A stretch of DNA of 64,000 nucleotides from positions 1 through 64,000 of IMG/VR virus record IMGVR_UViG_3300036770_006296. One strand, written 5' to 3'. Made by a program: the position numbers and the translations under genes. Numbering within the stretch: position 1 is the first letter of the stretch; each line of letters opens with the position of its first letter. Shown here piece after piece: positions 3,001-49,250 of this stretch. Below the pieces are notes generated by a model that saw only the letters and a program-made list of their open reading frames with translations, made no database searches and was not told the origin of the DNA.

Positions 3001-4784
3001 GTCCTGGATCTTTCTATGGAATTGCTGGTCCTTCACCTTACAGCGGCTACACTCTTCCTTTTCCTACTGGTGTTGGACAGAGTGTTATAAATTTCACTAA
3101 TACACAGCCAGGATATGAGTTTAATTTTAGTGATATCGGTATCCCCGGTCCTGTTAATATACCAACCATAGCAAACTATTCATCGCTTTTAAATATTCCT
3201 ATTTACCAAAGACAGGGAGGAATTGGCTACTGGGAAAATATATTGGAAAAAATATCTTTTGCTAATCTTTCCTTATGGGTAAATACAGGATATCCTTACA
3301 TAGACTATTTAACTTATGAATGGGATGAATCAACAGGTACTACAAAGGTATTAGAGAATCAGTTTGTTTTAGAGTTTATAAAACCTTCATTCTTTGAACA
3401 GGACACTGTTATTGTTCCTGTAGAAATAACTGATAAACCTCAGGAGCTAAGCGTGTTTAATGTAGGATACGAAACCGAAGATGTTGAGGGGGAGAGCGAG
3501 CTTTATAGATATGGAGGCGAATACGTCCCTAGCTTTAGAGAGGTTTTAAATTTTGAGAATGTAAAATATGATGTTCCTGAATGGACAATACCGAACTATA
3601 ATACATTTACCGTAAAGATAATTGAAAAGCCTGAAAAATCATCATCTTATGATATTGGATCTACAAGCTGTTTAGAAATAAATAGTGTATCACAAGAAGA
3701 AATAAATTTAATTAAGGGAGTAACTTATTATTTTGATCTTAGTGATTCTAGTAATACAGGATATCAGATATATTTTTCAGAAGGACAAATTGGTAACGAC
3801 ATCTCCAATGATTCAATAACACAGGGATATACATTAGTTGGTACGCCAGGAACTACAGGAGCTTATGTAGAATTTAATGTACCTTATGATTTACCATCTC
3901 CTGTCTATTACGTAGCAGAGGGCGGAAAATACATGGGTGGAAATATAAAAGTAATAGATTCTATAGAGTACTCCTACTGTTCTTTTGGACCATATAAAGA
4001 TAATTTTGGGGTATCTAGAAATGTTAATTATTATAAGTATTCTCCTCAGTGGATATTTAGAATAGGACAGAATTCTCCTTACAACCCGGTTTACAACATC
4101 ATAGGTGAAACCCCAGTAGATAAAAGGAATCTTTCTATTTTTGAAAGCTCATGGGATCCTGGCTTTTATAGAGAATATACGGGTCCTACTGGATATGTAA
4201 ACCTACCAGGTACAAGAGTAATGAAGGAACAGAAATCTTTCTTTGGTAGCAAATTTATGCAGACCCCAGATTTAATAAATTCTCAAAAGCAGTTAGTATA
4301 TCCACAGTCCTTAAAAGATGTTCTTGATCTAAATTATAATAACTATCCTAACTATGAAATACTATGGGAAAATAACCCGATTGAATTAAAAGGTGTTATT
4401 TTAATGGATAGAATGTTAAATAGATATTTCCTAGAAAATGGAGGAAAAGAATCGTTTAATAAATTTATAATTCCTGAATTTGGATTTGGTAGTACATCCG
4501 ATATCGATGATGATTTTAAAGAATATATGAATCAAAATATAATTCCTATATTCCAATCCAAACTAAACAGAGGATATCTTAAAAAAATACCAATCACTGC
4601 AAACGAGACACTAGTGCCGGTGATAGGAAATTTAGCAGACTATCAGAAATTGATTAATGGATATTTCAATTCGGGGGAGGTCAGATACACTAAAGTAAAT
4701 GATCTAAGATATGAATTTAGAATTCCTAAAGATCCTTCTTTTAACTATTCTGTCTGTTTCTCTATAGATATAGGAAAAATTTAA
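3..4784 (+). CDS. Large virion structural protein (baseplate/tail-associated), 5'-truncated by the window edge
   Basis: The frame is open from position 3, upstream of the GTG at 147 used by the ORF track. It is longer than 1545 aa, rich in Y/N/G/S/T, contains a cupredoxin-like module typical of phage virion proteins (about 3703-3957), and lies next to a tail fibre gene. Confidence 0.6.
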   Translation, partial: NQLTTFNGVNYQVGIFDKKGDYLIDYYKNPETQIGFEDFITNGFRNNGVLSYKLLNLEFLFNDNDSTNYTINRYFGLYVNAPEIAKFKIDGDALYKSQGSSGNTPVPEKNNKGYYFQETSYYQYNDNGVRLYLEPNYITGIIPNSDDVNILEETKLFWIKDKNDNFHSLKRYEDYGNSSPDPLYSVYGINGYENQLVIQDTSIDLSLLSGKDTDTKKQYPAVTTGQKGRGYSVIRIAGELNNYNENSFIFYNPLGYHGLPGAKYDIIRASDLSSTIDEWGPGSFYAQDGVYYYHPFGTNEKIAEALTGIFNSFNYNSFEAFNSGDEVVIRTNATGVQENTKYYLDFFQNFTTLQRMPDLKRGIVFINEKDVCDINQRQSFLGGSNYSNTRVKVKIEDANKIEVGKTFIETIKSTSTDSFNNIPEYSNKGASVVVGKYRFVDQYARDEKGEIVGLKDFETHATLEIANFTESIAFGTSGSISAFNTYDVSLGIFSFYGLREIDMDFWYSQYGYTPTPEYYKHLDVQPSGITKIIPGKTYFVSNGAFIDYDGNTIAGPDFFEGVVGEEEYTLATGSTGAESNVFPTLSSRGNITVGVTPSNFDYSFYPDLDAFPGFYGIQSLQFIDNEIGLDTKYKQLNFGKLNSEYDYTQDNYNPAFATNSRVSPYITKWVYRGGTDVRGNGYRLNANIAFSPLNFSPSFFRRSQDPQYFTHEWYQLQKPPYSFPEESLHSDKNYLAREINQSFLSNANPALRDYFLDYFSIEGDDLAQYYTGSTTINKIGLTERYSVFDFNTGSKFSETLFRGAKVRIKRTFTDYAQGESTKYVEDDRFYDDYKFSCVIVPIRNIVDEIQTPVKVKVIENRTFKNITFIVEVLIDDARVLNFEDISPENQYLDLDYFLLYSLKDKLDSSYFSTVVSTSLPSGLVELPTVGDIKLSSALNISSAPNIQGLFSTVNSGTVGNEGEIYIIPNPDYETDLRDEVNFTYLPSVQPDPVSGPDSTSPGSFYGIAGPSPYSGYTLPFPTGVGQSVINFTNTQPGYEFNFSDIGIPGPVNIPTIANYSSLLNIPIYQRQGGIGYWENILEKISFANLSLWVNTGYPYIDYLTYEWDESTGTTKVLENQFVLEFIKPSFFEQDTVIVPVEITDKPQELSVFNVGYETEDVEGESELYRYGGEYVPSFREVLNFENVKYDVPEWTIPNYNTFTVKIIEKPEKSSSYDIGSTSCLEINSVSQEEINLIKGVTYYFDLSDSSNTGYQIYFSEGQIGNDISNDSITQGYTLVGTPGTTGAYVEFNVPYDLPSPVYYVAEGGKYMGGNIKVIDSIEYSYCSFGPYKDNFGVSRNVNYYKYSPQWIFRIGQNSPYNPVYNIIGETPVDKRNLSIFESSWDPGFYREYTGPTGYVNLPGTRVMKEQKSFFGSKFMQTPDLINSQKQLVYPQSLKDVLDLNYNNYPNYEILWENNPIELKGVILMDRMLNRYFLENGGKESFNKFIIPEFGFGSTSDIDDDFKEYMNQNIIPIFQSKLNRGYLKKIPITANETLVPVIGNLADYQKLINGYFNSGEVRYTKVNDLRYEFRIPKDPSFNYSVCFSIDIGKI

Positions 4785-16455: not shown

Positions 16456-17064
16456 TTGATGTATAAAATTAAAAACTTCAAGGATTTTTGCCAAATTAAT
16501 GAGTCTAATGAGGATCTTTTCTTCAGAAGACATTTGGGAAGTAATGCCTCTACTTATGAAGATAGAGCTAAGAACCACTATGATTTAGGCAGTAATCCCA
16601 CTGTCCTACAGAAAACTCGAGACTTTTTCCAAAAAATGGAAAATAGAATAAACAGAGCGGCAGAAATAGGAAAGCAACAGGTAAGGCAAAACAGAGCGAC
16701 AAGAACTCACGGAGGTCCAGACACAGGATTTGAGATACTCTTTGGGGCTTTATCAGTTGTGCCCAATGTATTAAAAAGAGTATTTGGTCCTACTAAATAT
16801 GAATTCACTAAAAAATCTCCTAGCGATGAGAAAGTGGATATAGAATTCATGAGGCACACAAATGAAGACTTTGCACAAAATGAACTTCCTGCTATAAAAA
16901 CGGAAGATCAATTAGCAGATCATATAGGTGATCTTTATAATAGAGGTGACGTAGTAATGGGACAAGTTCCTGTATTAGATGATATAGCTAGAAATAGGGT
17001 AAATCTCTATTATCAACATCAGGCAAATCCAGCTCAGCCTATATTCCAAACAAATAATGTATAA
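16456..17064 (+). CDS. Hypothetical protein with CTS-like N-terminus (putative internal head protein)
   Basis: Begins KIKNFKDFCQINES. Confidence 0.5.
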   Translation: MMYKIKNFKDFCQINESNEDLFFRRHLGSNASTYEDRAKNHYDLGSNPTVLQKTRDFFQKMENRINRAAEIGKQQVRQNRATRTHGGPDTGFEILFGALSVVPNVLKRVFGPTKYEFTKKSPSDEKVDIEFMRHTNEDFAQNELPAIKTEDQLADHIGDLYNRGDVVMGQVPVLDDIARNRVNLYYQHQANPAQPIFQTNNV

Positions 17065-17067
17065 AAA

Positions 17068-17913
17068 ATGAAAAAATTCTCTTCAGCAGTAGAAAAAAAG
17101 AAGCAAGAACTAAAAGAAAGCCAAGTAGTTAATGAAAGAAACATGTACCTTGAGTTCTCTAAAAAATATCACAAAAAACATGGGGTTTCAGGACCTTTCG
17201 ATAAAAAATTCCAAGGAGATAAAAAAGCTCAGGAAGAATACATGGAAGGCCTATCTAAAGCTTGGAGTGATTATAAAAAAGAGAAGGGTATAAAACCTAA
17301 ATCTACTGGATCAAAATTTGACTTTGCTAAAAAGAAAATAAATGAGTCTAAAGCTCTTGAAATGGCTAAGAGCATGATAGGTGACGGAGGAGATCCTAAT
17401 TATCATTTCGTAACAATGTGTGACGACTTCTATTTTGAAAAAGGCGGGGAAATGATCAGATACAGTAAAGACATGATGTCCGCTCCACTTAAAGTGAAAA
17501 CCACTCCAGATTTAGGAGCTTACACTTTTGGGCCTTTTGCTAATTTAGATGAGTCTAAAATGTTTGCAGCAAGTATAGAATTAGACGAGATCAATGGTCC
17601 TAGAATGGTAACAATCGAAGACAGAAAAACCGGAGACGTCTATTGTAAATATTTAACTTGTAAGATGCAGCCAGTCTGGAACGAGATAGAGGAAGAAGAA
17701 ATAGAGGACGAGGAAGAACTTGAAGATCCAAATTCTGGGTATACTTACGGAGAGGAGCATGATGGTCACCCGGAGGAAACAGAAGACAGCTACGACGATG
17801 AAGATGAGGATGAAGATGATGAGTACGCTGCTACTATTCCTCAAGGGGATGACGATGAGGTCGAAGATGAAATTGAAGACGACGAAGACGAGGACGAATA
17901 CGACGAGGAATAA
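17068..17913 (+). CDS. Hypothetical protein with basic N-terminus and very acidic C-terminal tail (scaffold/core-like)
   Basis: LKES and INES sites, and a D/E-dominated C-terminal region of about 75 aa. Confidence 0.45.
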   Translation: MKKFSSAVEKKKQELKESQVVNERNMYLEFSKKYHKKHGVSGPFDKKFQGDKKAQEEYMEGLSKAWSDYKKEKGIKPKSTGSKFDFAKKKINESKALEMAKSMIGDGGDPNYHFVTMCDDFYFEKGGEMIRYSKDMMSAPLKVKTTPDLGAYTFGPFANLDESKMFAASIELDEINGPRMVTIEDRKTGDVYCKYLTCKMQPVWNEIEEEEIEDEEELEDPNSGYTYGEEHDGHPEETEDSYDDEDEDEDDEYAATIPQGDDDEVEDEIEDDEDEDEYDEE

Positions 17914-17918
17914 TAAAA

Positions 17919-18362
17919 ATGTTTGGCCCTATACAAAGTACCGCACTTTATCCGGTTTTACAACACTACACAGGATGTAAGATACATTCAATCTCACCAG
18001 ATGGGGATGATTTTTCATTTAGAACATTTCTAGGGGAAAGAGGAATACTTACTGAGGATACTACCGGAAATTGGAACATTACTATAGGAAAAGAGCTTGT
18101 ATACACGATCGAAAAGGATATCTTTAAGGTATTGATTAAGCCAGATAAAAAAAGCTCTTTAGAAGACTATATAGACATATTAAATGACTTAAATAACAAT
18201 CCAGACGTAAGCTATAGATCCAGGATTTTGGTAGCAAATATCATGAAATTTTTAGAGGAATATATAATAAGTTCTGATTTTGTCCCAAAGAAAAATTTAA
18301 GGATAGGACATCTTTTGATTTGTAATTTAAAAGGTAGAAAAATTATTAATTGTTTAAACTAA
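17919..18362 (+). CDS. Hypothetical protein
   Basis: 147-aa ORF in a tight operon arrangement. Confidence 0.5.
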   Translation: MFGPIQSTALYPVLQHYTGCKIHSISPDGDDFSFRTFLGERGILTEDTTGNWNITIGKELVYTIEKDIFKVLIKPDKKSSLEDYIDILNDLNNNPDVSYRSRILVANIMKFLEEYIISSDFVPKKNLRIGHLLICNLKGRKIINCLN

Positions 18363-20365
18363 TGGCTGGAATAAAATATTTAACGGACATATACGAAAAA
18401 AAAGGAAAGTCCTTTATTGAAAGCCTTTTCAATAAAAATTTAACTGTAACGGAAAATCTAGACGGTCCTTCTTTTTCTTTTGAAAGAGATTTTACTGGCG
18501 ATAACATATCTTTCTATAAAAAGGATCAAGATAATCCTATAACCAAGGTGGATAGGATATTAATGAGATATTACGAAAAGCCCATAAGCTATATAGAATC
18601 TCTATCTCTTGAAATCACAGATCAACTTCCTAAGGGATGGAGATTCGGAATGGTTTACTTTCCTAACAAAAAGCCAGTCAGAATTGAATACGATAGGATA
18701 CCAAAGAATCATCTTGTTTTAACACATGTTGTTGTTAGGGATGAATTTGGTGATATCATTAAAAATTTACAGGATAGGAATGAGCTCGATGAATGGGCGG
18801 ACAAGCTAGGAGTTGAAAGATCACCTATTATATTCCAAGGTAAACTTGATAGGGATCAAAAGATAGCTATAATGGATTTCCTTTCCACCCCATTAGCAGA
18901 TCTTAAAAATAAATTCCAGACCTCTAGTTTTAGTAACTATCTAATTTCAATCTTAAATAAAAAAGTAGAAAGAACAACACTTGGTAAGGATTTACAAGGT
19001 GAGATAGATTCCCTAGTTTTTAGATTCGAGGATGAAGACGGAAAAGAGGAAACTGTTTTAGCAAAAATGGTTGACCCTATTTTTCATGAGATAAACAGAA
19101 GCAGAAAAGTTACTCAAACATCTTATTTTCCTAGTGATGTTTATTCTTTGTGTCTTATAGATGTAATGAATTTTATACTAGAGACAGGAGTAGAAAACTT
19201 TATGGCTGAAGGCAATGATCCAGAGGAAAGATACATCAGTTTTGTTTTTGATGTATTTAAGAAGTTTGTATACGAGGAGGGTGAGAAATATGTAGGTGCA
19301 GATTTTCAAAAACCAGAATACTTGAAAACCGAAGGATTTGAAATAAATAAGGATTTAATAACTGACGAAGAAATTTTAAAGTCTATAGAAGACGACGAAG
19401 TTTATATAGACATTCTACAAATGATCCTTAACTCTTTTAGAAAGCTTAAAAGAAAACCACATGGATTTTTTACAGAGGGGCTAATCCAGCAATTTAATAT
19501 GCTAGTTGAAGATATTGCTAGCTATATAAACGCCAAAAAGAAAGATTTAGTTGAAGAGTCTTTAGGAGTTCCCAGCTTTGTTTGGTTTAAAAAAGTCGGT
19601 AGTAAATTTAATCCGATAATGAGTGACGAGGATGAAATAGACGAACTAGAAGAAATCATAGAAGGTTCTTCTTCTGGAGATGTTCTACCTCTTAATGAAT
19701 CTGAAATCCCAGAGACTATAACTGAAGACGAGAAGAAAGAAGACGCTTCAGAATTTTTCTCATTTAAGGATTTTAAAAAGGTAGTAGCTACACACAAAGA
19801 AAAAAAGAAGATAAAGATATTAAACGAGAATAGCCAGAAGGTAAATATTGTAATAGGTAAATTTCAGCCATTTAACAATGGGCATTTAAAAATGTGTACA
19901 AGATTAAAGAAGGAAAACAATTTACCGGTATTTCTATGTGTAGTACATCCTGGAAGTGAGCCAGGATCTAAATATCCATTCTCTGAGGATTTAATAAAAA
20001 AATCTATAGGTGCTTTAACATCAGAGAACAACAAACTTTTTGCTGGATATGAAATAATTCCGTCCAACCTTTTGGAGGATGCTCTAAATGCAGTAGTAAA
20101 ACATGCTAATCCTGCTTCTATATGTATAGGGGAAAGGGATTTTGAAAATATGATTCTTCAAAGAGAATGGGTAAGAAATAAATATGATTTAGAAGGAGGA
20201 GATATAGAAATATACAAAACACCGCAATGGTCAAATAATAATGATATTAGAACCTATATAAAAGATGGGGATTTCCAGCAATTTAAAAGTAAAGTCCCTA
20301 AATCTGTAGCGGTTCTTTTCAATGAATTTACTAAACAAATAAACGGATCCGAGAAGGATATATAA
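18350..20365 (+). CDS. Fusion of an RNA-ligase-like nucleotidyltransferase fold (degenerate) and a HIGH-superfamily cytidyltransferase-like domain
   Basis: N-terminal VTENLDG in the position of ligase motif I (K-x-D-G), and later IDSLVFRF/LAKMVD. C-terminal IVIGKFQPFNNGH resembles GRFQPxHxGH. Confidence 0.6.
   Translation: MFKLMAGIKYLTDIYEKKGKSFIESLFNKNLTVTENLDGPSFSFERDFTGDNISFYKKDQDNPITKVDRILMRYYEKPISYIESLSLEITDQLPKGWRFGMVYFPNKKPVRIEYDRIPKNHLVLTHVVVRDEFGDIIKNLQDRNELDEWADKLGVERSPIIFQGKLDRDQKIAIMDFLSTPLADLKNKFQTSSFSNYLISILNKKVERTTLGKDLQGEIDSLVFRFEDEDGKEETVLAKMVDPIFHEINRSRKVTQTSYFPSDVYSLCLIDVMNFILETGVENFMAEGNDPEERYISFVFDVFKKFVYEEGEKYVGADFQKPEYLKTEGFEINKDLITDEEILKSIEDDEVYIDILQMILNSFRKLKRKPHGFFTEGLIQQFNMLVEDIASYINAKKKDLVEESLGVPSFVWFKKVGSKFNPIMSDEDEIDELEEIIEGSSSGDVLPLNESEIPETITEDEKKEDASEFFSFKDFKKVVATHKEKKKIKILNENSQKVNIVIGKFQPFNNGHLKMCTRLKKENNLPVFLCVVHPGSEPGSKYPFSEDLIKKSIGALTSENNKLFAGYEIIPSNLLEDALNAVVKHANPASICIGERDFENMILQREWVRNKYDLEGGDIEIYKTPQWSNNNDIRTYIKDGDFQQFKSKVPKSVAVLFNEFTKQINGSEKDI
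20357..20365 (+). promoter_or_regulatory. Putative late promoter GATATATAA overlapping the upstream stop codon
   Basis: The motif ends in the TAA of the preceding gene and precedes the peptidase gene. Confidence 0.55.
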
Positions 20366-20382: not shown

Positions 20383-21243
20383 ATGAAAAGAATATTATCC
20401 TTTAATGACTTTGCAATTTTTGAATATAACACTTTTAACTACACTCCAGGAGATAAGTTAAATGAAGCTATATACCTAGACGAAAGAGAGAAAAGACCAG
20501 TAGACGAAGCGGCACTCAAGAAAATGAAAGCCTGCGTGTTTTTCTTAAACGGATCTTATCCGTTTTTTTCATCAATGCTATCTAGATTGATAATCAGAGA
20601 AAACAGAAATCTTAGATTTAAAACAATGGCAACTGACGGTGTTAGTATACACTATGATCCTGATTTTGTAAATGAGCACAGCGATGCAGAGATAATGTGG
20701 GTAATAGCACATGAGGTTTTACATAATACTCTACTTCACTTCCTAAGATGCCCTAAAGATAAAACTAAAGCGGGTGTATGGAATGTTGCAGCAGATTATG
20801 CACTTAACCAGGTATTAACTCCGATAGACCCAGGAACAATAAACACCGCTAAACCTGAACCTGTATCTAAGGGAGGAGTAGGAAAAATGGTGAAGGGTTC
20901 TTTATATCCAGGATGCGGGCACGTTTCTTACGATCGTGAGTTTGTTAACAGAAGTGCAGAATGGATATACGAAAAACTTTTAGCTAATGGATATGTTCCT
21001 GAGCCAGGTGAAGATACACCACCACCCCCACCACCCCCACCACCTCCACAGGATCCTGTAGTTGGTGATATCATATATGATAAAGATAATGATTCTTATG
21101 GTATAATTAAATCTATAGACGATTCTTCAGGCGAGCTTGAGTATGATCCTATACCTAAAAATAAGGTTAAAGAATACTTACAAAGAAAAGCTAAGGGTGA
21201 GAATATATTGGGAGACGATATAGAAAAAGAATTAGACTTCTAA
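20383..21243 (+). CDS. DUF2201-N-like HExxH metallopeptidase (stand-alone N-half)
   Basis: TMATDG..IHYDPDFV, VIAHEVLHNTLLH and WNVAADYALNQ, then a poly-Pro linker and a short SH3/KOW-like C-terminus. CTS-like N-terminus MKRILSFNDF. Confidence 0.8.
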   Translation: MKRILSFNDFAIFEYNTFNYTPGDKLNEAIYLDEREKRPVDEAALKKMKACVFFLNGSYPFFSSMLSRLIIRENRNLRFKTMATDGVSIHYDPDFVNEHSDAEIMWVIAHEVLHNTLLHFLRCPKDKTKAGVWNVAADYALNQVLTPIDPGTINTAKPEPVSKGGVGKMVKGSLYPGCGHVSYDREFVNRSAEWIYEKLLANGYVPEPGEDTPPPPPPPPPPQDPVVGDIIYDKDNDSYGIIKSIDDSSGELEYDPIPKNKVKEYLQRKAKGENILGDDIEKELDF

Positions 21244-21256
21244 TTTAATACGTTCT

Positions 21257-22240
21257 ATGAAAGCTAAGATAACTGACGTTAAAATACAAAAACTCCAGGA
21301 AGATGGAGGAGGGGGAGGAGGAAAGGGCCCAAGGAATCCTAAAAATGTAGAAGTTTGGCCAGGAGATGTTAATGATGTACCGGATAGGGACGAAGATGGA
21401 AACATCAAAGGAGATGACGTAGAAGGAGATTTTAAAAGATATTCCGGACCTAAAACAGATCCTGGATATAATCCAGGAGAAGTACTTAGACCTGGAGAAT
21501 TAGGGGATGTTGGAGATGGTGGAAATATAGACCCAGATAAGATAGCTGAGGAATGGGATGATATAACTAGAATAGCAACCACGGGAGGAAGTGCTCAACC
21601 ACCTCCTTCTATAAGAAGAGCTTTAACTAAACTAAAAGAGCCTGTTATTGACTGGAGAGCTGAGTTGGATAAATTTATAGATCAGGCAATATCCAAATCT
21701 AAGTACACATTGCCGGTTAGAAGATTTTTAGGAGCTGGGAAAGCACAGTATGGATATAAGAAATATAAAGAGGATTTTCAAAATATAGTTATTGCTATAG
21801 ATACATCCGGTTCTATTATTGATCCTTTATTAAAACAATTTATTTCAGAGGTCATTAAAATAACCGAAATATACAAACCCGATGAAACGACAATAATATA
21901 TTGTAGCGACAATATAGATAATATAGATACATTCGGTGTGGGTGAAGAGCCAGATTTAAATAAGATAGCATCAACTGGAGGAAACTATGAAGGATTCCAT
22001 CCACCTTTTAAATGGGTACAAAAAAATATGATTGACGAGGGAAAAACACCTTCGGTTTTTATTTATTTTACTGATGGATATGCAGATTTTCCACCACCCG
22101 AATATTATGATATAGAGAATTATTCAGATAGGTGTATTTGGGTACTCATTTCTTTTAATGATGAACCATTTCCTAGACCCGTTCCTTTTGGTGAAAGAAT
22201 AGATATAGTTTTAGCCAATAATAACGTAAAAAGAATTTAA
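21257..22240 (+). CDS. VWA-domain protein (DUF2201 C-half-like), copy A
   Basis: IDWRAEL, MIDAS motif AIDTSGSI, and TGGN...IYFTDG. Confidence 0.8.
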   Translation: MKAKITDVKIQKLQEDGGGGGGKGPRNPKNVEVWPGDVNDVPDRDEDGNIKGDDVEGDFKRYSGPKTDPGYNPGEVLRPGELGDVGDGGNIDPDKIAEEWDDITRIATTGGSAQPPPSIRRALTKLKEPVIDWRAELDKFIDQAISKSKYTLPVRRFLGAGKAQYGYKKYKEDFQNIVIAIDTSGSIIDPLLKQFISEVIKITEIYKPDETTIIYCSDNIDNIDTFGVGEEPDLNKIASTGGNYEGFHPPFKWVQKNMIDEGKTPSVFIYFTDGYADFPPPEYYDIENYSDRCIWVLISFNDEPFPRPVPFGERIDIVLANNNVKRI

Positions 22241-22243
22241 TCT

Positions 22244-23251
22244 ATGAAAGCAAAAATAACAGGCGTAAGAATTCAGCAAATGAAAGAATCCGGTGGTGGT
22301 GGTGGGGGAGGAGACGTAGAGGGGGACGACTTCGGTATCAGAAATCCTGAAAATGTCGACGAGTGGAAAGACGATGTTCCTGATGGGGATACTCCTGAAA
22401 GAGACAAAGATGGTAAAATAAAAGAGGAGGATTCCGAGTTCAAAAGATCTGATAGATCCGGAGGTGGTGGAGGTCCAGCTCCTGACGGATACAATCCTGG
22501 TGAAGTTCTTAGACCTGGGGAGTTGGGGGATCTTGGTGGAGACAGTGGACTTAACGGAGAAGCATTAGCTGAAGAATGGGAAGATATTACTAGAATAGCT
22601 GCAGCAGCGGGTAACGTTCCAGCATCTATAAAAAGAGCACTGACCAAAGTTAAAAGACCTGTTATTGATTGGAAGGCTGAATTAGCTAAGTATATAGACG
22701 AGGCAATAGCTAAATCTAAATATACATTACCAGCTAGAAGATTTTTAGGAGCGGGAAAAGCACAATATGGATATAAGAAATACAAAGAGGATTTCGAAAG
22801 CGTGGTTGTTGCAATAGATACTTCCGGATCTATCACTAGAGAAATGATAGAACAATTTTTAGGGGAGGTTATGAATATAACACAAGCATATACCCCTAAG
22901 AAAACCATTATATTATACTGCGACACCCAAGTTTACGAGCCGGATATATTAGAGCCAGGAGACACTCCTGATTTTAATAAAATAGCCGGAGGTGGTGGAA
23001 CATATTTTTGGCCTCCATTCAAATGGGTAGAAAGAAATTTAATAGAAGAAGGCGAAAAACCGACAGTATTTATATACTTTACTGACGGTGAAGCAAACTT
23101 CCCGTCTGCGGATGACTATGAGATTTCTCAATATGAAAATAGATGTATTTGGGTATTTCTCACATTTAATGATGAACCCTATCCAAACCCGCAACCTTTT
23201 GGCGAGAGAATAGACATAGTACTTGCCAATAAGAATGTAAAAAGAATATAA
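22244..23251 (+). CDS. VWA-domain protein (DUF2201 C-half-like), copy B; tandem paralog
   Basis: AIDTSGSI, GGGGT.F and IYFTDG; long near-identical blocks shared with copy A (e.g. RRFLGAGKAQYGYKKYKEDF, YNPGEVLRPGELGD). Confidence 0.8.
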   Translation: MKAKITGVRIQQMKESGGGGGGGDVEGDDFGIRNPENVDEWKDDVPDGDTPERDKDGKIKEEDSEFKRSDRSGGGGGPAPDGYNPGEVLRPGELGDLGGDSGLNGEALAEEWEDITRIAAAAGNVPASIKRALTKVKRPVIDWKAELAKYIDEAIAKSKYTLPARRFLGAGKAQYGYKKYKEDFESVVVAIDTSGSITREMIEQFLGEVMNITQAYTPKKTIILYCDTQVYEPDILEPGDTPDFNKIAGGGGTYFWPPFKWVERNLIEEGEKPTVFIYFTDGEANFPSADDYEISQYENRCIWVFLTFNDEPYPNPQPFGERIDIVLANKNVKRI

Positions 23252-23257
23252 AAAGTA

Positions 23258-23266
23258 GATATATAA
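23258..23266 (+). promoter_or_regulatory. Putative late promoter GATATATAA
   Basis: Intergenic, before the AAA+ gene. Confidence 0.6.
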
Positions 23267-23284
23267 AGAAAATAAAAAAATAAA

Positions 23285-24889
23285 ATGGGCAAAAGAATTT
23301 ATAATTTTAACGAGTTTGTCAATGAATCCTATATGAGTGAGGGATTTTTCTCTGATTTGGGATCGAAAATATCATCATGGGCAAAAAGTTTATATAATGC
23401 AGTTAAGTCAGGATTAGTTAGATTGATATCATCAGGACCTAAGAAAGGAACCCCTAGGGTGGCATTGTTTGACGATAGCAAGAGTGATTCAATCTTAAAT
23501 CAGGTTAACAATTTCTACAAAGGTACTGAATTCTATAATATGAATAACCTTGAGATCCCTGAGACCCTTGAAGAAAGCTTCTTATGGGAAGATGCAGTTC
23601 CTTTAACTTATCCTATAGAAGACGACGTACCAAACTATTCTGAACAGGAGATAAAAGAGACTATTAAAAGAAACATGAGAGATATCTTTAGAATTGCAGA
23701 TGAAATGGAAGCAGCTAAAGAATCTGGAGCATCTGATGACGAGTTAGATGATATTTACAGAGGAATTCTAGATGTTAAACCAATATTCATATACGGAGCT
23801 CCAGGGATTGGTAAAACTCAAATAGTAGCCCAAGTTTGTGACGAATTAGGAAAAGAATTATACGGACATAAACTATCTTTAGTTAACGTAGATGGTGAGA
23901 ACGCAGAGCCTGTTGATTTTGCTGGGGTACCTAGTGTAGTAGATATTGAATCACCAAATGAAGAAAACCCAATTGGAAGAGGTGTTACCAGATCTAATAT
24001 TAATGTTGATATACTCCCTTATGATAACGGAAAAAATCAAAAAGGGGGAATCCTATTCATCGACGAGTTAAACCGTATGCCTAAAGAAGTTATTAAGATA
24101 TTTATGAAACTTGCTCAGTCCAGAAGAATCGGTAACAATTATAAGGTTCCTTCTAGATGGTATATCGTTGCAGCAGGTAACCGAAAAGAAGATGATAGAG
24201 GAAATATCGAAGAATTAGGTACTGCTCTTAGAGACAGATTCGAAGCTGTTAACTTTGTACCAACTATAAAAGGATTTAGAGGATATATCGAGGGAAGCAG
24301 ATACAAAGACGTTGTTCTTCCAGAGCTTCTAGATTTCTTAGAATTCCAGCCAGTATACTTCCATAATTTGGATCCGGCTCTTAAGAAAACAAAATATCCA
24401 ACTCCTAGGGCTTGGGTAGATGCTTCGAACTCTTTAAGAAGAGTTATTAGAGAATTGGAAGCTAAAGGAGTTACAAAGATTCCGGAAGATGTGATAAGAA
24501 AAGAATTCTCTAAAAATGTTGGATATGATGCAACATCAGCTTTCTTGAATTTCTACAAGATTGCTAAAGATATTCCAGTAAAAGATCTTATTCTACCTTA
24601 CACGGATCCCGATAAAGCTCCAGTTCCTGCGGATAAAGGGGATAGACCAGATTATACACACGCTTTATTTGGAGCGGTTATGAGAAAAAGCACAGAGATG
24701 CAATTAACACCTAAAGAGGTTTGTAATTATGCTAAATGGTTAGAAAGAATTGATAAAGAGGAAGAAGGAGCAGCACAGATTACAACTTTCTTTAAGCTTC
24801 ATCCAGAATTGGCAAAAGATCCTGCAATGTACTCTTGCTTAGGACCTTTGGCTGATAAATGGGGAGCTAAAGTTGGACAAGAGTTCTAA
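23285..24889 (+). CDS. MoxR-type AAA+ ATPase, locus 1
   Basis: Walker A GAPGIGKT, Walker B ILFIDE, AAGNR, ALRDRF and PTPRAW. CTS-like N-terminus IYNFNEFVNES. Confidence 0.85.
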   Translation: MGKRIYNFNEFVNESYMSEGFFSDLGSKISSWAKSLYNAVKSGLVRLISSGPKKGTPRVALFDDSKSDSILNQVNNFYKGTEFYNMNNLEIPETLEESFLWEDAVPLTYPIEDDVPNYSEQEIKETIKRNMRDIFRIADEMEAAKESGASDDELDDIYRGILDVKPIFIYGAPGIGKTQIVAQVCDELGKELYGHKLSLVNVDGENAEPVDFAGVPSVVDIESPNEENPIGRGVTRSNINVDILPYDNGKNQKGGILFIDELNRMPKEVIKIFMKLAQSRRIGNNYKVPSRWYIVAAGNRKEDDRGNIEELGTALRDRFEAVNFVPTIKGFRGYIEGSRYKDVVLPELLDFLEFQPVYFHNLDPALKKTKYPTPRAWVDASNSLRRVIRELEAKGVTKIPEDVIRKEFSKNVGYDATSAFLNFYKIAKDIPVKDLILPYTDPDKAPVPADKGDRPDYTHALFGAVMRKSTEMQLTPKEVCNYAKWLERIDKEEEGAAQITTFFKLHPELAKDPAMYSCLGPLADKWGAKVGQEF

Positions 24890-28918: not shown

Positions 28919-30325
28919 ATGATCATAGATATTGAGAATACAGGAAATGGATTATCTGTTTCACATTACACTGAGGAAGGGGAAGTTAATTTATTGAAAA
29001 TTCAGGTACCAAAGCATCTACAATTTGTTTGGCAAAAAACATCGGAGAACGACAAAAGTAAAGATAAGGAATGGAGGTCATGGGACAATTTTCCTGTGAA
29101 GAAAGTCACCACTAGCAAGTTTGACAAATATAGAGTGGTAGAAATATTAGAAGCGATAGATCCCGAAATAACAAAACCACTTTGGGATTACCAAACTCCT
29201 AAAAAATACTTTGTCGATATAGAGGTTGAGATCACTGACAATCGTGCGGATTCTTTAGATACTGAAAATTCTAAGAACCGGGTGCTTTCAATAGGGATGG
29301 CTTCTTCTCACGGAAAGATTCTGGTTATTGGACTCGAAGATATTCCGCAGGATAAAATATTAAAAATAGAAAAAAGGATAAAGGAACACTTTAAGGATCA
29401 GCCAGGAGAATGGACTTTTAATTATAGGAAGTTCGAGACTGAGTTCGATATGCTTTACACTTTCTTCTCTAAGCTAGTTCCTAAAATGCCTTTAATAACT
29501 GGATGGAACTGGTTTGGGTATGACTGGCCTTATCTTATCAATCGAGCAAAAAGATTAGGAATAGATCCAAAGATAGCTTCACCCAGTGGGATTCTCTTAG
29601 GAATGAACCAGATTCCGATGCACATACTAATGGTTGACTACCTGGACATCTATAAGAAATGGGATAGGGTTATAAAAATCAGAGAATCTAACTCATTAGA
29701 CTATGTTGCTAATCAAGCTATAGGGATAAAAAAGATTTCTTATAACGGAACATTAAAAGATTTATATGAATCAGATTTTGAGACATTTATCTTTTATAAC
29801 GCAGTCGACTGTGCTTTAGTTCATTATATAGATAAAAGGCTGGACACGCTTTCAACTTTCTTTAAAATTGCCGAAGTTAGTAGAGTGGAAATAAACAGAG
29901 CCCTATCACCTGTGTGGACCACTGAGGTACTGATGCTAAGAAAATTCCTGGAAAGAAAAAGAGTTATTGTCAACGAGAGAAAAGGAGAATCACATGTAAA
30001 GTTTGAAGGAGCTTATGTTAAGAAGCCAGAAAAAGGATTATATGAATGGATCGCTTGTTTTGACTTTGCCTCACTATATCCTAACACGATGATGCAATGG
30101 GGAATTTCACCAGAGGCTTATATTGGGAAGAATTTAAAAGAAATACCAGAAGGTGCAATTAAAACATCTTCAGGTGCGGTGTTTTACAACAAAGATGGGC
30201 AAGAACCTATACTAAGAGAAATATTAAAAGGACTTTATGCACAAAGGAAAGCTACTAAGAAAAAATATTTTGAGTGTGAAAAGGAAATAGAAAAAATTAA
30301 AAAAGCAATAAAATCAAAATCATAA
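28919..30325 (+). CDS. polB: Family B DNA polymerase, N-terminal half (3'-5' exonuclease plus motif A)
   Basis: ExoI FVDIEVE, ExoII ITGWNWFGYDWPYL, ExoIII YNAVD and motif A FDFASLYP. Ends in the first fingers helix (LYAQRKATKKK); motifs B and C are absent. Confidence 0.9.
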   Translation: MIIDIENTGNGLSVSHYTEEGEVNLLKIQVPKHLQFVWQKTSENDKSKDKEWRSWDNFPVKKVTTSKFDKYRVVEILEAIDPEITKPLWDYQTPKKYFVDIEVEITDNRADSLDTENSKNRVLSIGMASSHGKILVIGLEDIPQDKILKIEKRIKEHFKDQPGEWTFNYRKFETEFDMLYTFFSKLVPKMPLITGWNWFGYDWPYLINRAKRLGIDPKIASPSGILLGMNQIPMHILMVDYLDIYKKWDRVIKIRESNSLDYVANQAIGIKKISYNGTLKDLYESDFETFIFYNAVDCALVHYIDKRLDTLSTFFKIAEVSRVEINRALSPVWTTEVLMLRKFLERKRVIVNERKGESHVKFEGAYVKKPEKGLYEWIACFDFASLYPNTMMQWGISPEAYIGKNLKEIPEGAIKTSSGAVFYNKDGQEPILREILKGLYAQRKATKKKYFECEKEIEKIKKAIKSKS

Positions 30326-47756: not shown

Positions 47757-49250
47757 ATGTCTAAAAGAATAAAAAATTTCTCAGATTTTGTTAATGAATC
47801 ATACAGTCCTTCAAAATTAGACGAAGGGTTTCTTTCAACTATAAAGGATTATGCAAAAAGATTTTTTGGTTGGACTGGTAAATTTTTAAAGAGTCTAGCA
47901 CAGGGATTAATAGAGCCTATTCCTTATGGTCCTAAGAAAGGACTTCCTACTATTATGCTTTTCTTACCTGAAAATGGGTCTATCTACAAACAGATGACAG
48001 AATTTGAAATGGGTGTTAATCCTATAAAAGAAGCAAGGATACCTTTGGAATATACAGGAGAAGATCAGAGTGTAAGAAACATCTCTGCTGATCAATTAAA
48101 GCAAGATGTAATAAGATTATATAGAAGTAAAGAAAGAGGTGGTAGGGCTAAGCCTATCTTTATTTACGGAGCTCCTGGTATTGGTAAAACAGAAATAGTC
48201 GGACAAGCAGCTGATGAATTGGGTGTTCCGGTAATGAAGCTAGATTTACAATTTATGAATCCGGAGGATTTCTTAGGTATTCCTAGTAGACACGATATAG
48301 AGCCAGTTCAGGTAGAAGGTGGAAAATTGATTAGTTCAGGTAAAGGATTTACAAGATCTAATCCACCAATTTTACTTCCAACTGACAACGGTAATGAAGA
48401 TAGAGGAGGTATAATATTTATGGATGAGATGAACAGAGCTAATAAAGCAGTTCTTAACTCCATTATGCAATTTGTACAAAAAGGAGAAATAGGTCCTTAT
48501 AAATTACCAGATAGATGGGTGATTGTAGCAGCTGGTAACAGACCAGAAGAAGCTGAAGGTGTTGCTGATTTCGACTTTGCATTAGCAGACCGATTCACTA
48601 TTAAAAACTACGTCCCTACAATCGAGGGATATGCTTCTTGGGCTGATAAGAACGAAAAGATCCTTCCAGAGTTAGTTACTTTCTTAACGTTTAACCAAGA
48701 TTACTTCCATAATCTAGATGCCGATAAAAAATCTCTTAACTATCCTACGCCTAGATCTTGGACCGACGGAGCATTAATACTCCACGACGAGATCCAATAT
48801 AAAGGAGTAGATTCTTGGAGAGATATTTCTAGGCAAGATATATTAGACATCTTCTACGATCAAGTTGGTCCCGAAGCAGCTGGTAAATTTGTAGCTTACT
48901 TAGACATTTTAAGAAAAGTTACGGATTCTGATATGGAAGATATGATCAACAATCCTATGTCTGCTAAAATGGTACCAGAGGCACAATCCACAAAGAGCGT
49001 ACTTTATGGACTTATAGAAATGGTGATGAAGAGAGTTAAATCGTATGACACACAGAAATTCTATAACGTTATGGAGTATTTCAATAGATACAACGAGCTG
49101 GAACCGCTAAGCTGGCTATATAAAGATATCTTATCTAAATATCCTCAGTTCAAATTTGGAGGAAGTTCTAACACTCCGGAGGATGAATTAAAACACAAAG
49201 CAGCCTTAATGATTACAAAAGGAGCTAAAGATAAAGGTCTACAAGGATGA
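47757..49250 (+). CDS. MoxR-type AAA+ ATPase, locus 2
   Basis: GAPGIGKT, IIFMDE, AAGNR, ALADRF and PTPRSW; leader IKNFSDFVNES; shares a GPKKG-containing N-domain with the locus 1 ATPase. Confidence 0.85.
   Translation: MSKRIKNFSDFVNESYSPSKLDEGFLSTIKDYAKRFFGWTGKFLKSLAQGLIEPIPYGPKKGLPTIMLFLPENGSIYKQMTEFEMGVNPIKEARIPLEYTGEDQSVRNISADQLKQDVIRLYRSKERGGRAKPIFIYGAPGIGKTEIVGQAADELGVPVMKLDLQFMNPEDFLGIPSRHDIEPVQVEGGKLISSGKGFTRSNPPILLPTDNGNEDRGGIIFMDEMNRANKAVLNSIMQFVQKGEIGPYKLPDRWVIVAAGNRPEEAEGVADFDFALADRFTIKNYVPTIEGYASWADKNEKILPELVTFLTFNQDYFHNLDADKKSLNYPTPRSWTDGALILHDEIQYKGVDSWRDISRQDILDIFYDQVGPEAAGKFVAYLDILRKVTDSDMEDMINNPMSAKMVPEAQSTKSVLYGLIEMVMKRVKSYDTQKFYNVMEYFNRYNELEPLSWLYKDILSKYPQFKFGGSSNTPEDELKHKAALMITKGAKDKGLQG

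What the first reader, a model, noticed from the sequence alone, without database searches (positions are those of the whole stretch)
18350..20365. Apparently catalytically dead ligase fold fused to a HIGH-type nucleotidyltransferase
The N-domain has TENLDG (18449-18466) where ATP-dependent ligases have the adenylated Lys (E-K-x-D-G). Downstream motifs also lack the usual acids (WRFGMVY, IDSLVFRF), while a motif-V-like Lys is kept (LAKMVD). The C-domain has GKFQPFNNGH, with Asn where HIGH/HxGH enzymes have the first His. The fusion may be a pseudo-enzyme nucleic-acid- or nucleotide-binding scaffold. It contains internal LNES/LNEN sites and an FSFKDF tag-like segment, and lies directly upstream of the peptidase-VWA-AAA locus.
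Basis: partly seen in the sequence, partly recalled or inferred. Interest (0 to 1): 0.6.

Follow-up and report, generated by a model that had tools for sequence, protein, structure and literature searches.

The report
Dead RNA-ligase domain fused to adenylyltransferase
A jumbo-phage replication-module protein carries an RNA-ligase-2-like domain that has lost its catalytic lysine and two other catalytic motifs, yet is kept by strong selection and fused to an NMN-adenylyltransferase-like domain; it belongs to a large, undescribed phage family that has lost this lysine repeatedly.

Summary
The ORF (ATG 18362 to 20365, 667 aa) has three parts:
- An N-terminal domain with the T4 RNA ligase 2 nucleotidyltransferase fold (Z 12.0 to 1s68).
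- A helical domain and an acidic disordered linker.
- A C-terminal archaeal-NMNAT/NadM/PPAT-like HIGH-family domain (Z 15.5 to 1f9a).

In this lineage the ligase domain reads:
- Motif I: TENLDG, where the sister clade has SEKLDG.
- Motif III: FGMVY, where relatives have FGMEY.
- Motif IV: IDSLVF, where relatives have IEGVVF.
- Motif Ia: Arg changed to Lys.

These changes are derived and are present in 108 of the 121 closest proteins. The domain is still under purifying selection (dN/dS 0.01-0.08) as strong as on the C-domain. It is therefore a retained pseudo-ligase, not a decaying one.

The family has 610 representative clusters, almost all from uncultured large phages. Its motif I lysine changed at least 11-14 times.

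The Asn in GKFQPFNNGH sits at a position that varies T/H/N/S across the family, and PPAT has Thr there. The GH histidine is kept.

Adjacency to the peptidase-VWA-AAA genes is not conserved family-wide.

The most likely function is a non-catalytic nucleic-acid-end or nucleotide-binding module tethered to a probably active adenylyltransferase. The substrate is unknown.

The parts
18362..20365 (+). Whole gene (667 aa plus stop). The ATG at 18362 overlaps the upstream stop as TAATG. The ORF lister's TTG at 18350 is probably not used.
18362..19126 (+). Rnl2-type nucleotidyltransferase-fold domain (residues 1-255), catalytically degenerate
   Evidence: Z 12.0 to 1s68. Foldseek E 8.6e-8 to 2hvr. PF09414 hits in relatives. 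dN/dS 0.01-0.075.
18449..18466 (+). Motif I, TENLDG: Asn32 stands where T4 Rnl2 has the AMP-accepting Lys35
   Evidence: hhalign register
18512..18523 (+). Motif Ia equivalent, FYKK: K53 and K54 align to T4 Rnl2 K54 and R55. R-to-K at position 54 is fixed in this clade.
18638..18658 (+). Motif III, WRFGMVY: Val98 where K-bearing relatives have Glu (FGMEY; T4 Rnl2 E99)
18713..18730 (+). Motif IIIa equivalent, LVLTHV: Thr121 and His122 align to T4 Rnl2 F119 and D120. The aromatic residue is absent family-wide.
19004..19027 (+). Motif IV, IDSLVFRF: Asp-Ser where relatives have Glu-Gly (T4 Rnl2 E204-G205)
19058..19078 (+). Motif V, LAKMVDP: Lys235 is kept (matches Rnl2 K225). Position 237 (matches K227) is Val or Ile family-wide.
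19127..19621 (+). All-helical domain (residues 256-420), occupying the place of the Rnl2 C-terminal domain. No convincing structural match.
   Evidence: best Z 4.3
19622..19822 (+). Acidic linker of low model confidence (residues 421-487). dN/dS 0.09-0.2.
19748..19831 (+). Clade-conserved short motif SEFFSFKDFKKVVATHKEKKKIKILNEN at the linker/C-domain junction.
19823..20362 (+). HIGH-family (archaeal NMNAT / NadM / PPAT-like) nucleotidyltransferase domain (residues 488-667)
   Evidence: Z 15.5 to 1f9a. PF01467 E 0.002, 18.9 bits, below the 21-bit cut-off. TIGR00125 E 2.4e-5. phrog_395 cytidyltransferase E 3e-5. dN/dS 0.014-0.064.
19856..19885 (+). HIGH-type motif GKFQPFNNGH: Asn at the variable first position, the GH histidine kept
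20228..20260 (+). WSNNNDIRTYI: a degenerate equivalent of the second ATP-binding signature (SGTEVRRR in M. thermoautotrophicum NMNAT; ISATKVR in other family members). Ser and Arg630 are kept.

Best explanation
The gene encodes a two-enzyme-fold protein that descends from a fusion of an Rnl2-type RNA ligase with a NadM/archaeal-NMNAT-type adenylyltransferase. This fusion is widespread in uncultured large phages and sits in their replication/recombination gene block. In this phage's lineage the ligase half can no longer form the lysyl-AMP intermediate: K to N in motif I, E to V in motif III, EG to DS in motif IV, R to K in motif Ia. It is therefore not a ligase. It is nonetheless conserved as tightly as a working enzyme, so it most likely serves as a non-catalytic module. 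That module would bind a nucleic-acid end or nick, or an adenylylated or dinucleotide ligand, or a partner protein, and would bring the C-terminal domain to it. The C-terminal domain keeps the essential GH histidine, the G-K-F-Q-P-F scaffold and the distal Ser...Arg. It is probably still a nucleotide-binding, likely active, adenylyltransferase; its acceptor substrate is unknown. Shown: the folds, the motif states, the derived and recurrent loss of the lysine, the purifying selection and the synteny. Inferred: loss of ligase activity (from the established roles of these residues), retained binding function, activity of the C-domain, and any coupling between the two domains.
For: Folds. Motif states and their polarity: the window's clade has N / V,T,L,A / DS, while its sister clade P0110-P0113 and the surrounding group have K-D-G / E / EG. 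The Asn state is present in 108 of the 121 closest proteins, down to 61% identity. Established residue roles in T4 Rnl2: K35 carries the AMP, E99 and R55 hold the ribose, and K225 and K227 hold the phosphate (PMC3149579). Motif I lysine mutants lose ligation steps 1 and 2 in every ligase tested (PMC3514331). Selection: dN/dS within the Asn clade is 0.013-0.075 for the ligase-like domain, 0.014-0.064 for the HIGH domain and 0.09-0.2 for the linker. The lysine changed state at least 11 times on supported branches, and 14 times on all branches, of a 153-representative tree. Many K-less lineages keep a fully canonical C-domain (GRFQPFTLGH ... ISATKVR). Half of the old pocket is kept: E31 in 149 of 156 members, G35, K53, D64-R65, K235 and D238-P239. 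Synteny with a gp32-like SSB, a primase-like protein and a UvsW-like helicase is conserved across distant members.
Against: There is no biochemical evidence. K54, a clade-specific R-to-K change at the Rnl2 R55 position, cannot be formally excluded as an alternative nucleophile. The C-domain scores below the Pfam and NCBIfam family cut-offs. Its second signature is degenerate (SNNNDIR), so it may also be inactive. In some sister lineages the GH histidine is lost as well (NNGD, NNGN), which shows the family can dispense with C-domain catalysis too. The whole family lacks the Rnl2 F119 aromatic and the K227 lysine, so even the K-bearing members may not be orthodox ligases.
Confidence: 0.55

Rival explanations
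1. Division of labour: the HIGH-family domain adenylylates a 5'-phosphate nucleic-acid end directly, using the same chemistry as NMN + ATP -> NAD+ (an A5'pp5'N linkage). The lysine-less ligase domain then performs only ligation step 3, sealing the pre-adenylylated end. The protein would be a ligase that bypasses the lysyl-AMP intermediate.
For: Motif I lysine mutants of several ligases still seal pre-adenylylated substrates: MthRnl K97A fully, T4 Rnl2 K35A partially, and Chlorella virus ligase K27A (PMC3514331). The Rnl2 mutants R55K and K227Q lose self-adenylylation but keep step 3 (PMC3149579). The window protein naturally has K at the R55 position, and the whole family has V or I at the K227 position. 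The fusion is the dominant architecture and the lysine is lost repeatedly within it. K-less lineages commonly keep a canonical HIGH domain.
Against: This clade has also lost the motif III Glu (a ribose contact) and the motif IV Glu-Gly, which step 3 would be expected to need. Lysine loss shows no association with presence of the C-domain in independent contrasts (1.1 pairs one way against 0.9 the other). Some K-less lineages also lose the GH histidine (P0115, P0117). No HIGH-family enzyme is known to me that adenylylates polynucleotide 5' ends.
Confidence: 0.15
2. Fully non-enzymatic scaffold: both domains are pseudoenzymes. The protein is a structural or adaptor component of the phage replication/recombination machinery, comparable to the non-catalytic tail-fibre-attachment role of T4 RNA ligase 1 (that role is from my own knowledge, not tested here).
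For: Across the family both active sites decay in various lineages (motif I, III and IV; HIGH motif variants NNGD, NNKH, TIDD, TKRL). The C-domain's second signature is degenerate here, and the domain falls below the family cut-offs. The gene has a conserved place next to helicase, SSB and primase genes. The linker carries a conserved short motif suited to protein-protein contact.
Against: GKFQPFNNGH is conserved in all but one of the members of this clade examined (one reads NKGH). The distal Arg630 is nearly invariant. The C-domain has very low dN/dS. This pattern is what a working nucleotide site gives.
Confidence: 0.15
3. Ordinary NAD+ salvage enzyme: the protein is the phage's NMN adenylyltransferase, as JGI annotates several relatives, and the N-terminal domain is only a regulatory or oligomerisation appendage.
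For: The closest structures are archaeal NMNAT and NadM. The sequence alignment to M. thermoautotrophicum NMNAT spans the whole domain, including GDW/GDF and LPxSV. JGI names several relatives 'nicotinamide mononucleotide adenylyltransferase'.
Against: No NadV/NAPRTase was found in the 206-kb record. Surveyed phages that carry NadM always carry NadV (PMC9503650). No Nudix domain is present. The gene lies in the replication block, not with NAD genes. PPAT and NadD match equally well, so substrate cannot be read from the fold. The record is only about 81% complete, so the absence of NadV is not proof.
Confidence: 0.1

Closest known systems
T4 RNA ligase 2 (Rnl2, gp24.1; PDB 1s68, 2hvq, 2hvr), Pfam RNA_ligase PF09414
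   Same: The adenylyltransferase fold matches (Z 12.0, 190 residues). The motifs are collinear at almost the same residue numbers: 32/35, 54/55, 98/99, 121/119, 216/204, 235/225. The nucleotidyltransferase domain is followed by a helical domain. K-bearing relatives keep EKxDG, E, EG and one motif V Lys.
   Different: The window protein has N, V and DS at the catalytic positions and does not itself match PF09414. The family lacks the F119 aromatic and the K227 lysine. Its helical domain (165 aa) has no clear match to the Rnl2 C-domain. It carries a C-terminal HIGH-family domain that Rnl2 lacks.
Archaeal NMN adenylyltransferase / NadM adenylyltransferase domain (PDB 1f9a, 1m8f, 2qjo)
   Same: The fold matches over the whole domain (Z 15.0-15.5). 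The G-[KR]-x-Q-P-F-x-x-G-H motif, the GD[FW] and [LV]PxSV C-terminal elements and the distal Arg are shared.
   Different: The first motif position is Asn, not His. SGTxxR is degenerate (SNNNDIR). There is no Nudix domain as in NadM, and no NadV partner was found in the genome. The scores are below the curated family cut-offs.
Phosphopantetheine adenylyltransferase (PPAT/CoaD; PDB 1b6t, 9xwq)
   Same: The fold match is equally good (Z 14-15). Its signature is TxGH rather than HxGH: GSFDPLTNGH aligns to GKFQPFNNGH. This shows the first His is dispensable in an active member of the superfamily.
   Different: The C-terminal elements resemble NMNAT rather than PPAT. No CoA-pathway context is present.
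Snurportin-1 m3G-cap-binding domain (PDB 1xk5)
   Same: It is a covalent-nucleotidyltransferase-type fold (Z 5.3 to the N-domain). The PDB entry describes it as a cap-binding domain bound to an m3GpppG dinucleotide. It is thus a precedent for this fold serving as a binder of a 5'-5'-linked dinucleotide end.
   Different: It is only a distant structural relative and is eukaryotic. It is related to capping enzymes rather than to Rnl2. No sequence similarity was detected.
Engineered adenylation-deficient ligases (T4 Rnl2 R55K / K227Q / K35A; MthRnl K97A)
   Same: The natural protein carries equivalents of these substitutions: K at the R55 position, V at the K227 position, and no motif I Lys (PMC3149579, PMC3514331).
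   Different: The laboratory mutants keep the motif III and IV acids and still seal pre-adenylylated ends. The window protein has lost those acids as well.

Membership tests
ATP-dependent RNA ligase, Rnl2 type (covalent nucleotidyltransferase superfamily; PF09414) | Adenylyltransferase (nucleotidyltransferase) fold | tested here: met
   Z 12.0 to 1s68 and 11.5 to 2hvq. All other top hits are ligases or capping enzymes. Foldseek E ~1e-7.
ATP-dependent RNA ligase, Rnl2 type (covalent nucleotidyltransferase superfamily; PF09414) | Motif I KxDG with the lysine nucleophile | tested here: not met
   The motif is ENLDG, with Asn32. This is conserved in 108 of the 121 closest proteins. The sister clade has EKLDG.
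ATP-dependent RNA ligase, Rnl2 type (covalent nucleotidyltransferase superfamily; PF09414) | Motif III Glu (nucleotide ribose contact) | tested here: not met
   The window has FGMVY; the clade has V, T, L or A; relatives have FGMEY.
ATP-dependent RNA ligase, Rnl2 type (covalent nucleotidyltransferase superfamily; PF09414) | Motif IV Glu-Gly | tested here: not met
   The window has IDSLVF; relatives have IEGVVF. G217S is fixed in 42 of 43 clade members.
ATP-dependent RNA ligase, Rnl2 type (covalent nucleotidyltransferase superfamily; PF09414) | Motif V KxK | tested here: inconclusive
   One Lys (K235) is kept. The second position is Val or Ile family-wide. The register was inferred from the strand/helix boundaries and hhalign, not from a residue-level superposition.
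ATP-dependent RNA ligase, Rnl2 type (covalent nucleotidyltransferase superfamily; PF09414) | Match to the Pfam RNA_ligase model | tested here: not met
   There is no PF09414 hit for the window protein even at E 10, and none in the whole 206-kb record. Thirteen of 19 relatives do hit.
ATP-dependent RNA ligase, Rnl2 type (covalent nucleotidyltransferase superfamily; PF09414) | Self-adenylylation and strand sealing | not testable with these tools
   This needs a biochemical assay.
HIGH-signature nucleotidyltransferase superfamily (PF01467; NMNAT / NadM / PPAT) | Rossmann-like nucleotidyltransferase fold | tested here: met
   Z 15.5 to 1f9a, 153 of 164 residues, rmsd 2.5 A.
HIGH-signature nucleotidyltransferase superfamily (PF01467; NMNAT / NadM / PPAT) | (H/T)xGH signature | tested here: inconclusive
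   The signature here is NNGH. The GH His is kept. The first position is N here and T/H/N/S across the family. The PPAT precedent has T. Whether Asn supports catalysis is untested.
HIGH-signature nucleotidyltransferase superfamily (PF01467; NMNAT / NadM / PPAT) | Second ATP-binding signature (ISxTxxR / SGTxxR) | tested here: inconclusive
   The window has WSNNNDIRTYI: Ser and Arg630 are kept and the rest has changed. Other family members have ISATKVR.
HIGH-signature nucleotidyltransferase superfamily (PF01467; NMNAT / NadM / PPAT) | Score above the curated family cut-off | tested here: not met
   PF01467 scores 17-18.9 bits against a 21-bit cut-off. TIGR00125 scores 24.4 against 27.7. The NMNAT equivalog models score far below their cut-offs.
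NadM (bifunctional NMNAT-Nudix) NAD salvage enzyme | Fused Nudix domain and a NadV partner in the genome | tested here: not met
   No Nudix domain was found in the protein. No PF04095 match was found in the 206-kb record, which is about 81% complete.

The most novel reading that the evidence does not exclude
The protein is an RNA-5'-end-directed adenylyltransferase. The dead ligase domain, whose ancestors held an A5'pp5'N-RNA intermediate, would bind an RNA (or DNA) 5' end. The tethered NMNAT-like domain would then build or remove a 5'-5' pyrophosphate-linked cap on it, for example NMN + pppA-RNA -> NAD-capped RNA, or ATP + pRNA -> AppRNA. This would be the first post-transcriptional NAD-capping (or ligase-independent 5'-adenylylating) enzyme. 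A 2021 review states that no such enzyme had been identified and that NMNATs are the candidates (PMC8131947).
Probability: 0.08. Interest if true: 0.9.

Novelty: new variant of a known kind. Interest (0 to 1): 0.6.

Why it matters
Two points make this worth attention.

First, it is a clean natural case of a pseudo-ligase. The nucleophile and two acidic motifs are gone. The loss can be placed against an intact sister clade. The domain has been held under strong purifying selection through divergence to about 61% identity. Pseudoenzymes derived from the ligase/capping-enzyme fold are rare, and their roles are instructive.

Second, the family is large: 610 clusters at 50% identity, essentially only in uncultured large phages. 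It sits in the replication module and is named, if at all, only 'NMN adenylyltransferase' or 'hypothetical protein'. I found no paper describing the Rnl2-HIGH-domain fusion.

The repeated loss of the ligase lysine, with the adenylyltransferase signature usually kept, suggests the two folds cooperate in a way that does not need lysyl-AMP chemistry. That idea leads to simple, decisive assays. It touches two open questions: ligase-independent 5' adenylylation and post-transcriptional NAD capping.

If the protein is only a scaffold, it is still a conserved, unexplained component of jumbo-phage replication.

Tried and rejected
- **Sequence search of the PDB.** A profile of the N-domain alignment A2 gave no hit even at E 10. 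hhalign of the family profile against T4 Rnl2 was weak (probability 0.8-6%) but in motif register. The fold assignment therefore rests on the structure searches.
- **A relocated catalytic lysine.** Positions fixed differently between the Asn clade and its K-bearing or K-to-M (P0114-P0117) relatives include only R54K, E317K and R410K. K at position 54 is common in K-bearing members too (47 of 119). In independent contrasts it tended to accompany lysine loss, but not significantly (4.6 against 0.3 pairs, median p 0.125). No model coordinates were available to measure distances.
- **Lysine loss tied to the HIGH domain.** Independent contrasts showed no trend between lysine loss and presence of the C-domain.
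- **Other ligase or NAD genes in the phage record.** There was no PF09414, PF01068, PF01653 or PF04095 match. The record is about 81% complete, so these are absences in what is held, not in the phage.
- **C-terminal extensions of the 800-1288 aa family members.** No Pfam family scored at E 0.1 or better apart from chance-level hits.
- **Upstream ORFs as a split ligase.** The three small ORFs 16456-18362 are unrelated by eye to the 421-aa KxDG protein found upstream of the LR756500 homologue, have no Pfam family, and a search with that protein finds nothing in this genome.
- **Clamp-binding idea for the FFSFKDF motif.** No gp45-type clamp was detected in the record, so no complex prediction was run.
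- **Cellular homologues.** A scan of 185,579 species genomes gave two hits, both on metagenome-assembled contigs.
- **Literature.** Searches for the fusion found nothing.
Full report
**What is there**

The window is the first 64 kb of a 206,617-bp IMG/VR virus record, estimated about 81% complete. It has 32-38% GC and genes almost all on the + strand.

The finding's ORF runs 18350-20365. The ATG at 18362 overlaps the stop of the upstream ORF as TAATG. Identical database proteins are 667 aa and begin MAGIK. I therefore take 18362-20365 as the gene. Residue numbers below are for the 667-aa protein.

**Genomic setting**

Upstream lie a gp32-like single-strand-binding protein, a primase-like protein, a UvsW-like helicase and three small ORFs with no family match. 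Downstream lie a DUF2201_N metallopeptidase-like gene, two DUF2201 VWA-like genes and a MoxR-type AAA ATPase. Further along are DNA polymerase, ribonucleotide reductase and topoisomerase II genes. The gene sits in the replication block of a large T4-like or jumbo phage.

The only relatives in the GenBank phage collection are six uncultured 'huge phage' genomes of 462-735 kb. A scan of 185,579 prokaryote species genomes found two contigs of metagenome-assembled genomes and nothing else.

**Domains**

An AlphaFold model of the whole protein (pLDDT 76) and one of residues 1-421 alone (pLDDT 86, pTM 0.81) show four parts:
- An alpha/beta domain, residues 1-255.
- A helical domain, residues 256-420.
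- A low-confidence acidic linker, residues 421-487.
- A Rossmann-like domain, residues 488-667.

In an exhaustive structural comparison against 48,161 PDB representatives, residues 1-244 match best to the T4 RNA ligase 2 adenylyltransferase domain (1s68: Z 12.0, rmsd 3.7 A, 190 residues). Next come Naegleria RNA ligase (Z 11.1), fungal tRNA ligase (10.9), trypanosome editing ligase (10.9) and T4 Rnl1 (8.7). DNA ligases score Z 6-8.5 and capping enzymes Z 5-6. Foldseek agrees, with T4 Rnl2 at E 5e-8 to 1e-7.

The window protein gives no Pfam hit in this domain. Thirteen of 19 relatives' N-domains hit RNA_ligase PF09414, best E 2.3e-6.

The helical domain has no convincing match (Z at most 4.3).

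The C-domain matches M. jannaschii NMNAT at Z 15.5 (153 residues, rmsd 2.5 A). M. thermoautotrophicum NMNAT, NadD, NadM and PPAT are tied within one Z unit. Weak sequence hits point the same way: PF01467, TIGR00125, phrog_395 and PDB NMNAT and PPAT chains.

**The ligase motifs**

The table aligns the window protein with its relatives and with T4 Rnl2, which was fetched from the T4 record.

| Motif | Window protein | K-bearing sister clade | T4 Rnl2 |
|---|---|---|---|
| I | TENLDG | SEKLDG | EKIHG, K35 |
| Ia | FYKK | FYKR | AKR, K54-R55 |
| III | FGMVY | FGMEY | FGEF, E99 |
| IIIa | LVLTHV | same as window | YVFDII, F119-D120 |
| IV | IDSLVF | IEGVVF | EGYVLK, E204 |
| V | LAKMVDP | VAKIVDP | IKCK, K225 and K227 |

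Published work on T4 Rnl2 assigns the following roles. K35 carries the AMP. E99 and R55 hold the ribose. F119 stacks on the adenine. K225 and K227 hold the phosphate (PMC3149579).

The window protein therefore lacks the nucleophile and the two conserved acids, and it has Lys for the motif Ia Arg. It keeps E31, D34, G35, K53, D64-R65, K235 and D238-P239, which are nearly invariant in the family. Two Rnl2 residues are missing from the whole family, not only from this clade. The F119 aromatic is Thr or Ser, and K227 is Val or Ile.

**Polarity and persistence of the loss**

A word-index search with the N-domain found 655 relatives at 90% clustering, nearly all of them 630-680-aa fusions. Of the 121 closest proteins (the window's own plus the 120 closest clusters), 108 carry ENLDG, down to 61% identity.

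A full HMM search of 1.84 billion representatives found 610 clusters at 50% identity. They fall into three length classes: about 400 aa, about 600-690 aa, and 800-1288 aa.

Among 156 aligned members the motif I residue is K in 119, Q in 13, N in 11, M in 6 and D in 5.

On a FastTree of 153 members, built without the motif I columns, the window's clade (N; V or A; DS) is sister to P0110-P0113 (K-D-G, E, EG). Both are nested in a group that is canonical throughout. Lysine is also the state in all outgroup ligases, so the Asn is a derived loss.

The K / non-K state changes at least 14 times on the tree, 11 of them on well-supported branches. Motif III Glu and motif IV Glu each change about 24 times.

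The huge phage LR756500 carries an independent example: ENLDG, FQY and DS together with GRFQPFTLGH.

**Selection**

I took gene sequences from 11 related IMG/VR contigs, all from the Asn clade. Nei-Gojobori dN/dS values were as follows:

| Region | dN/dS |
|---|---|
| Ligase-like domain | 0.013-0.075 |
| Helical domain | 0.02-0.18 |
| Linker | 0.09-0.20 |
| HIGH domain | 0.014-0.064 |

The degenerate ligase domain is thus as constrained as the C-domain. It has a function.

**The C-domain signature**

GKFQPFNNGH is conserved in all but one of the members of this clade examined (one reads NKGH) and in most of its K-bearing sisters, two of which read GKFQPFSNGH. Across the family the first signature position is T (27), H (22), N (10), S (2) or Q (1). 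By HMM alignment the final His is kept in 86 of 101 members.

The best PPAT match aligns GSFDPLTNGH to the window's motif, and M. thermoautotrophicum NMNAT aligns GRMQPFHRGH. An Asn at the first position is therefore no evidence of inactivity.

The second signature is degenerate here: SNNNDIR against SGTEVRR in the NMNAT and ISATKVR in many family members. Ser and a nearly invariant Arg630 remain. I judge this domain as probably nucleotide-binding and possibly active. The substrate is unknown, because NMNAT, NadD and PPAT match equally well.

Several lineages do lose the GH histidine (NNGD, NNGN, TIDD and others). Many K-less lineages keep a fully canonical TxGH ... ISATKVR domain.

**How it most likely works**

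Shown: the two folds, the lost ligase residues, the strong constraint and the conserved replication-module position.

Inferred: the N-domain cannot form lysyl-AMP and so cannot ligate. This follows from the universal requirement for the motif I lysine in ligation steps 1 and 2 (PMC3514331). It is probably retained as a binding module for a nucleic-acid end or nick, an adenylylated or dinucleotide ligand, or a partner protein. It would be tethered by a flexible acidic linker to a HIGH-family adenylyltransferase.

A precedent for this fold working as a binder appears in my own hit list. The snurportin m3G-cap-binding domain, solved with an m3GpppG cap dinucleotide, matches at Z 5.3.

**Rivals**

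- **Division of labour.** The HIGH domain would make the A5'pp5'N-activated end and the lysine-less domain would do only step 3. This is attractive because lysine-less and R55K/K227Q-type ligases still seal pre-adenylylated ends (PMC3514331, PMC3149579). This clade has also lost the motif III and IV acids, and lysine loss does not track presence of the HIGH domain.
- **Plain NAD salvage.** No NadV and no Nudix domain were found. Surveyed phages with NadM always have NadV (PMC9503650).
- **Wholly non-catalytic scaffold.** This remains possible.

The adjacency to the peptidase-VWA-AAA genes holds in the window and in a sister contig (L002). It is absent in another family member (L003), while the helicase-side synteny is kept. 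I see no support for a functional link.

'FSFKDF' is part of a clade-conserved motif, SEFFSF[KRND]xFKKV..T.KEKKKIKILNE, at the end of the linker. 'LNES' falls on a conserved [LI]xES spot in the linker. These may be short interaction motifs. Nothing indicates a tag or a cleavage site.

**Novelty**

Full-text searches found no description of an Rnl2-HIGH-domain fusion or of this family. Sources name relatives only 'hypothetical protein' or 'nicotinamide mononucleotide adenylyltransferase'.

I class it as a new variant of known kinds: a pseudo-ligase derivative of Rnl2 fused to a HIGH-family nucleotidyltransferase.

The most novel reading not excluded is an RNA-5'-end-directed NMNAT-type enzyme, doing NAD capping or ligase-independent 5' adenylylation. 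No post-transcriptional NAD-capping enzyme had been identified as of a 2021 review (PMC8131947). I give this reading about 8%.

**Limits**

- There is no biochemistry.
- The tree is a FastTree of 153 of the 610 representatives.
- The motif V and IIIa register rests on secondary-structure boundaries and a weak profile alignment.
- The virus record is incomplete, so absences of genes are provisional.

Noticed in passing
L018:4707-5972 (LR756500.1, directly upstream of the family member at L018:6004-7965): A 421-aa protein carries a canonical-looking ligase motif I (SEKLDG) and a C-terminal EGIVF...KLTG. It sits immediately upstream of the K-less fusion in a 462-kb huge phage. It has no Pfam family and no homologue in the window's genome. 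The same phage also has a LigA-type adenylation domain (L019).
   Followed up: partly
window 19748-19831: A conserved short motif, SEFFSF[KRND]xFKKV..T.KEKKKIKILNE, lies in an otherwise variable acidic linker. It is shared in weaker form (NEFFAYxDFKKVIKT) with the K-bearing sister clade. It could be a protein-interaction motif. A clamp-binding role was considered, but no gp45-type clamp was found in the record.
   Followed up: partly
window 20383-24889 and 47757-49250: Three consecutive DUF2201-type genes are followed by a MoxR-type AAA ATPase. The first has the metallopeptidase-like N-domain and the other two have the VWA-like domain. A second ATPase of the same PHROG (phrog_1297) lies 23 kb downstream. 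PHROGs labels the DUF2201 genes 'HNH endonuclease', which the Pfam hits do not support.
   Followed up: no
window 16456-18362: Three small ORFs (202, 281 and 147 aa) between the helicase and the fusion gene have no family match. They are syntenic in a sister contig (202, 254 and 148 aa in L002). The 281-aa protein ends in a roughly 80-residue run that is almost entirely Asp and Glu.
   Followed up: partly
whole record G000 (206,617 bp): No ATP- or NAD-dependent DNA ligase, no PF09414 RNA ligase and no NadV were detected in the 81%-complete record, although it has a full replication module. The phage either relies on the host ligase or encodes one in the missing part.
   Followed up: partly
proteins P0125, P0126, P0144, P0148, P0149, P0151, P0206 (family members of 1000-1288 aa): Long family members carry 350-650 extra C-terminal residues after the HIGH domain. 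These have no Pfam match. In L003 such a long form is followed directly by the Hc1/DUF4494 genes, with no DUF2201/AAA module.
   Followed up: partly
L021 (CALAZP010000190.1, 64-kb contig of an 'uncultured Saprospirales bacterium' MAG): This is one of only two matches among 185,579 species genomes. It is probably a phage contig binned into a MAG, and is a weak hint at a Bacteroidota host.
   Followed up: no
window 147-4784 and 28919-30325: A 1545-aa ORF at the window's start has tail-fibre family hits in residues 1157-1267. A 468-aa ORF matches only part of the DNA polymerase families, so the polymerase may be split.
   Followed up: no
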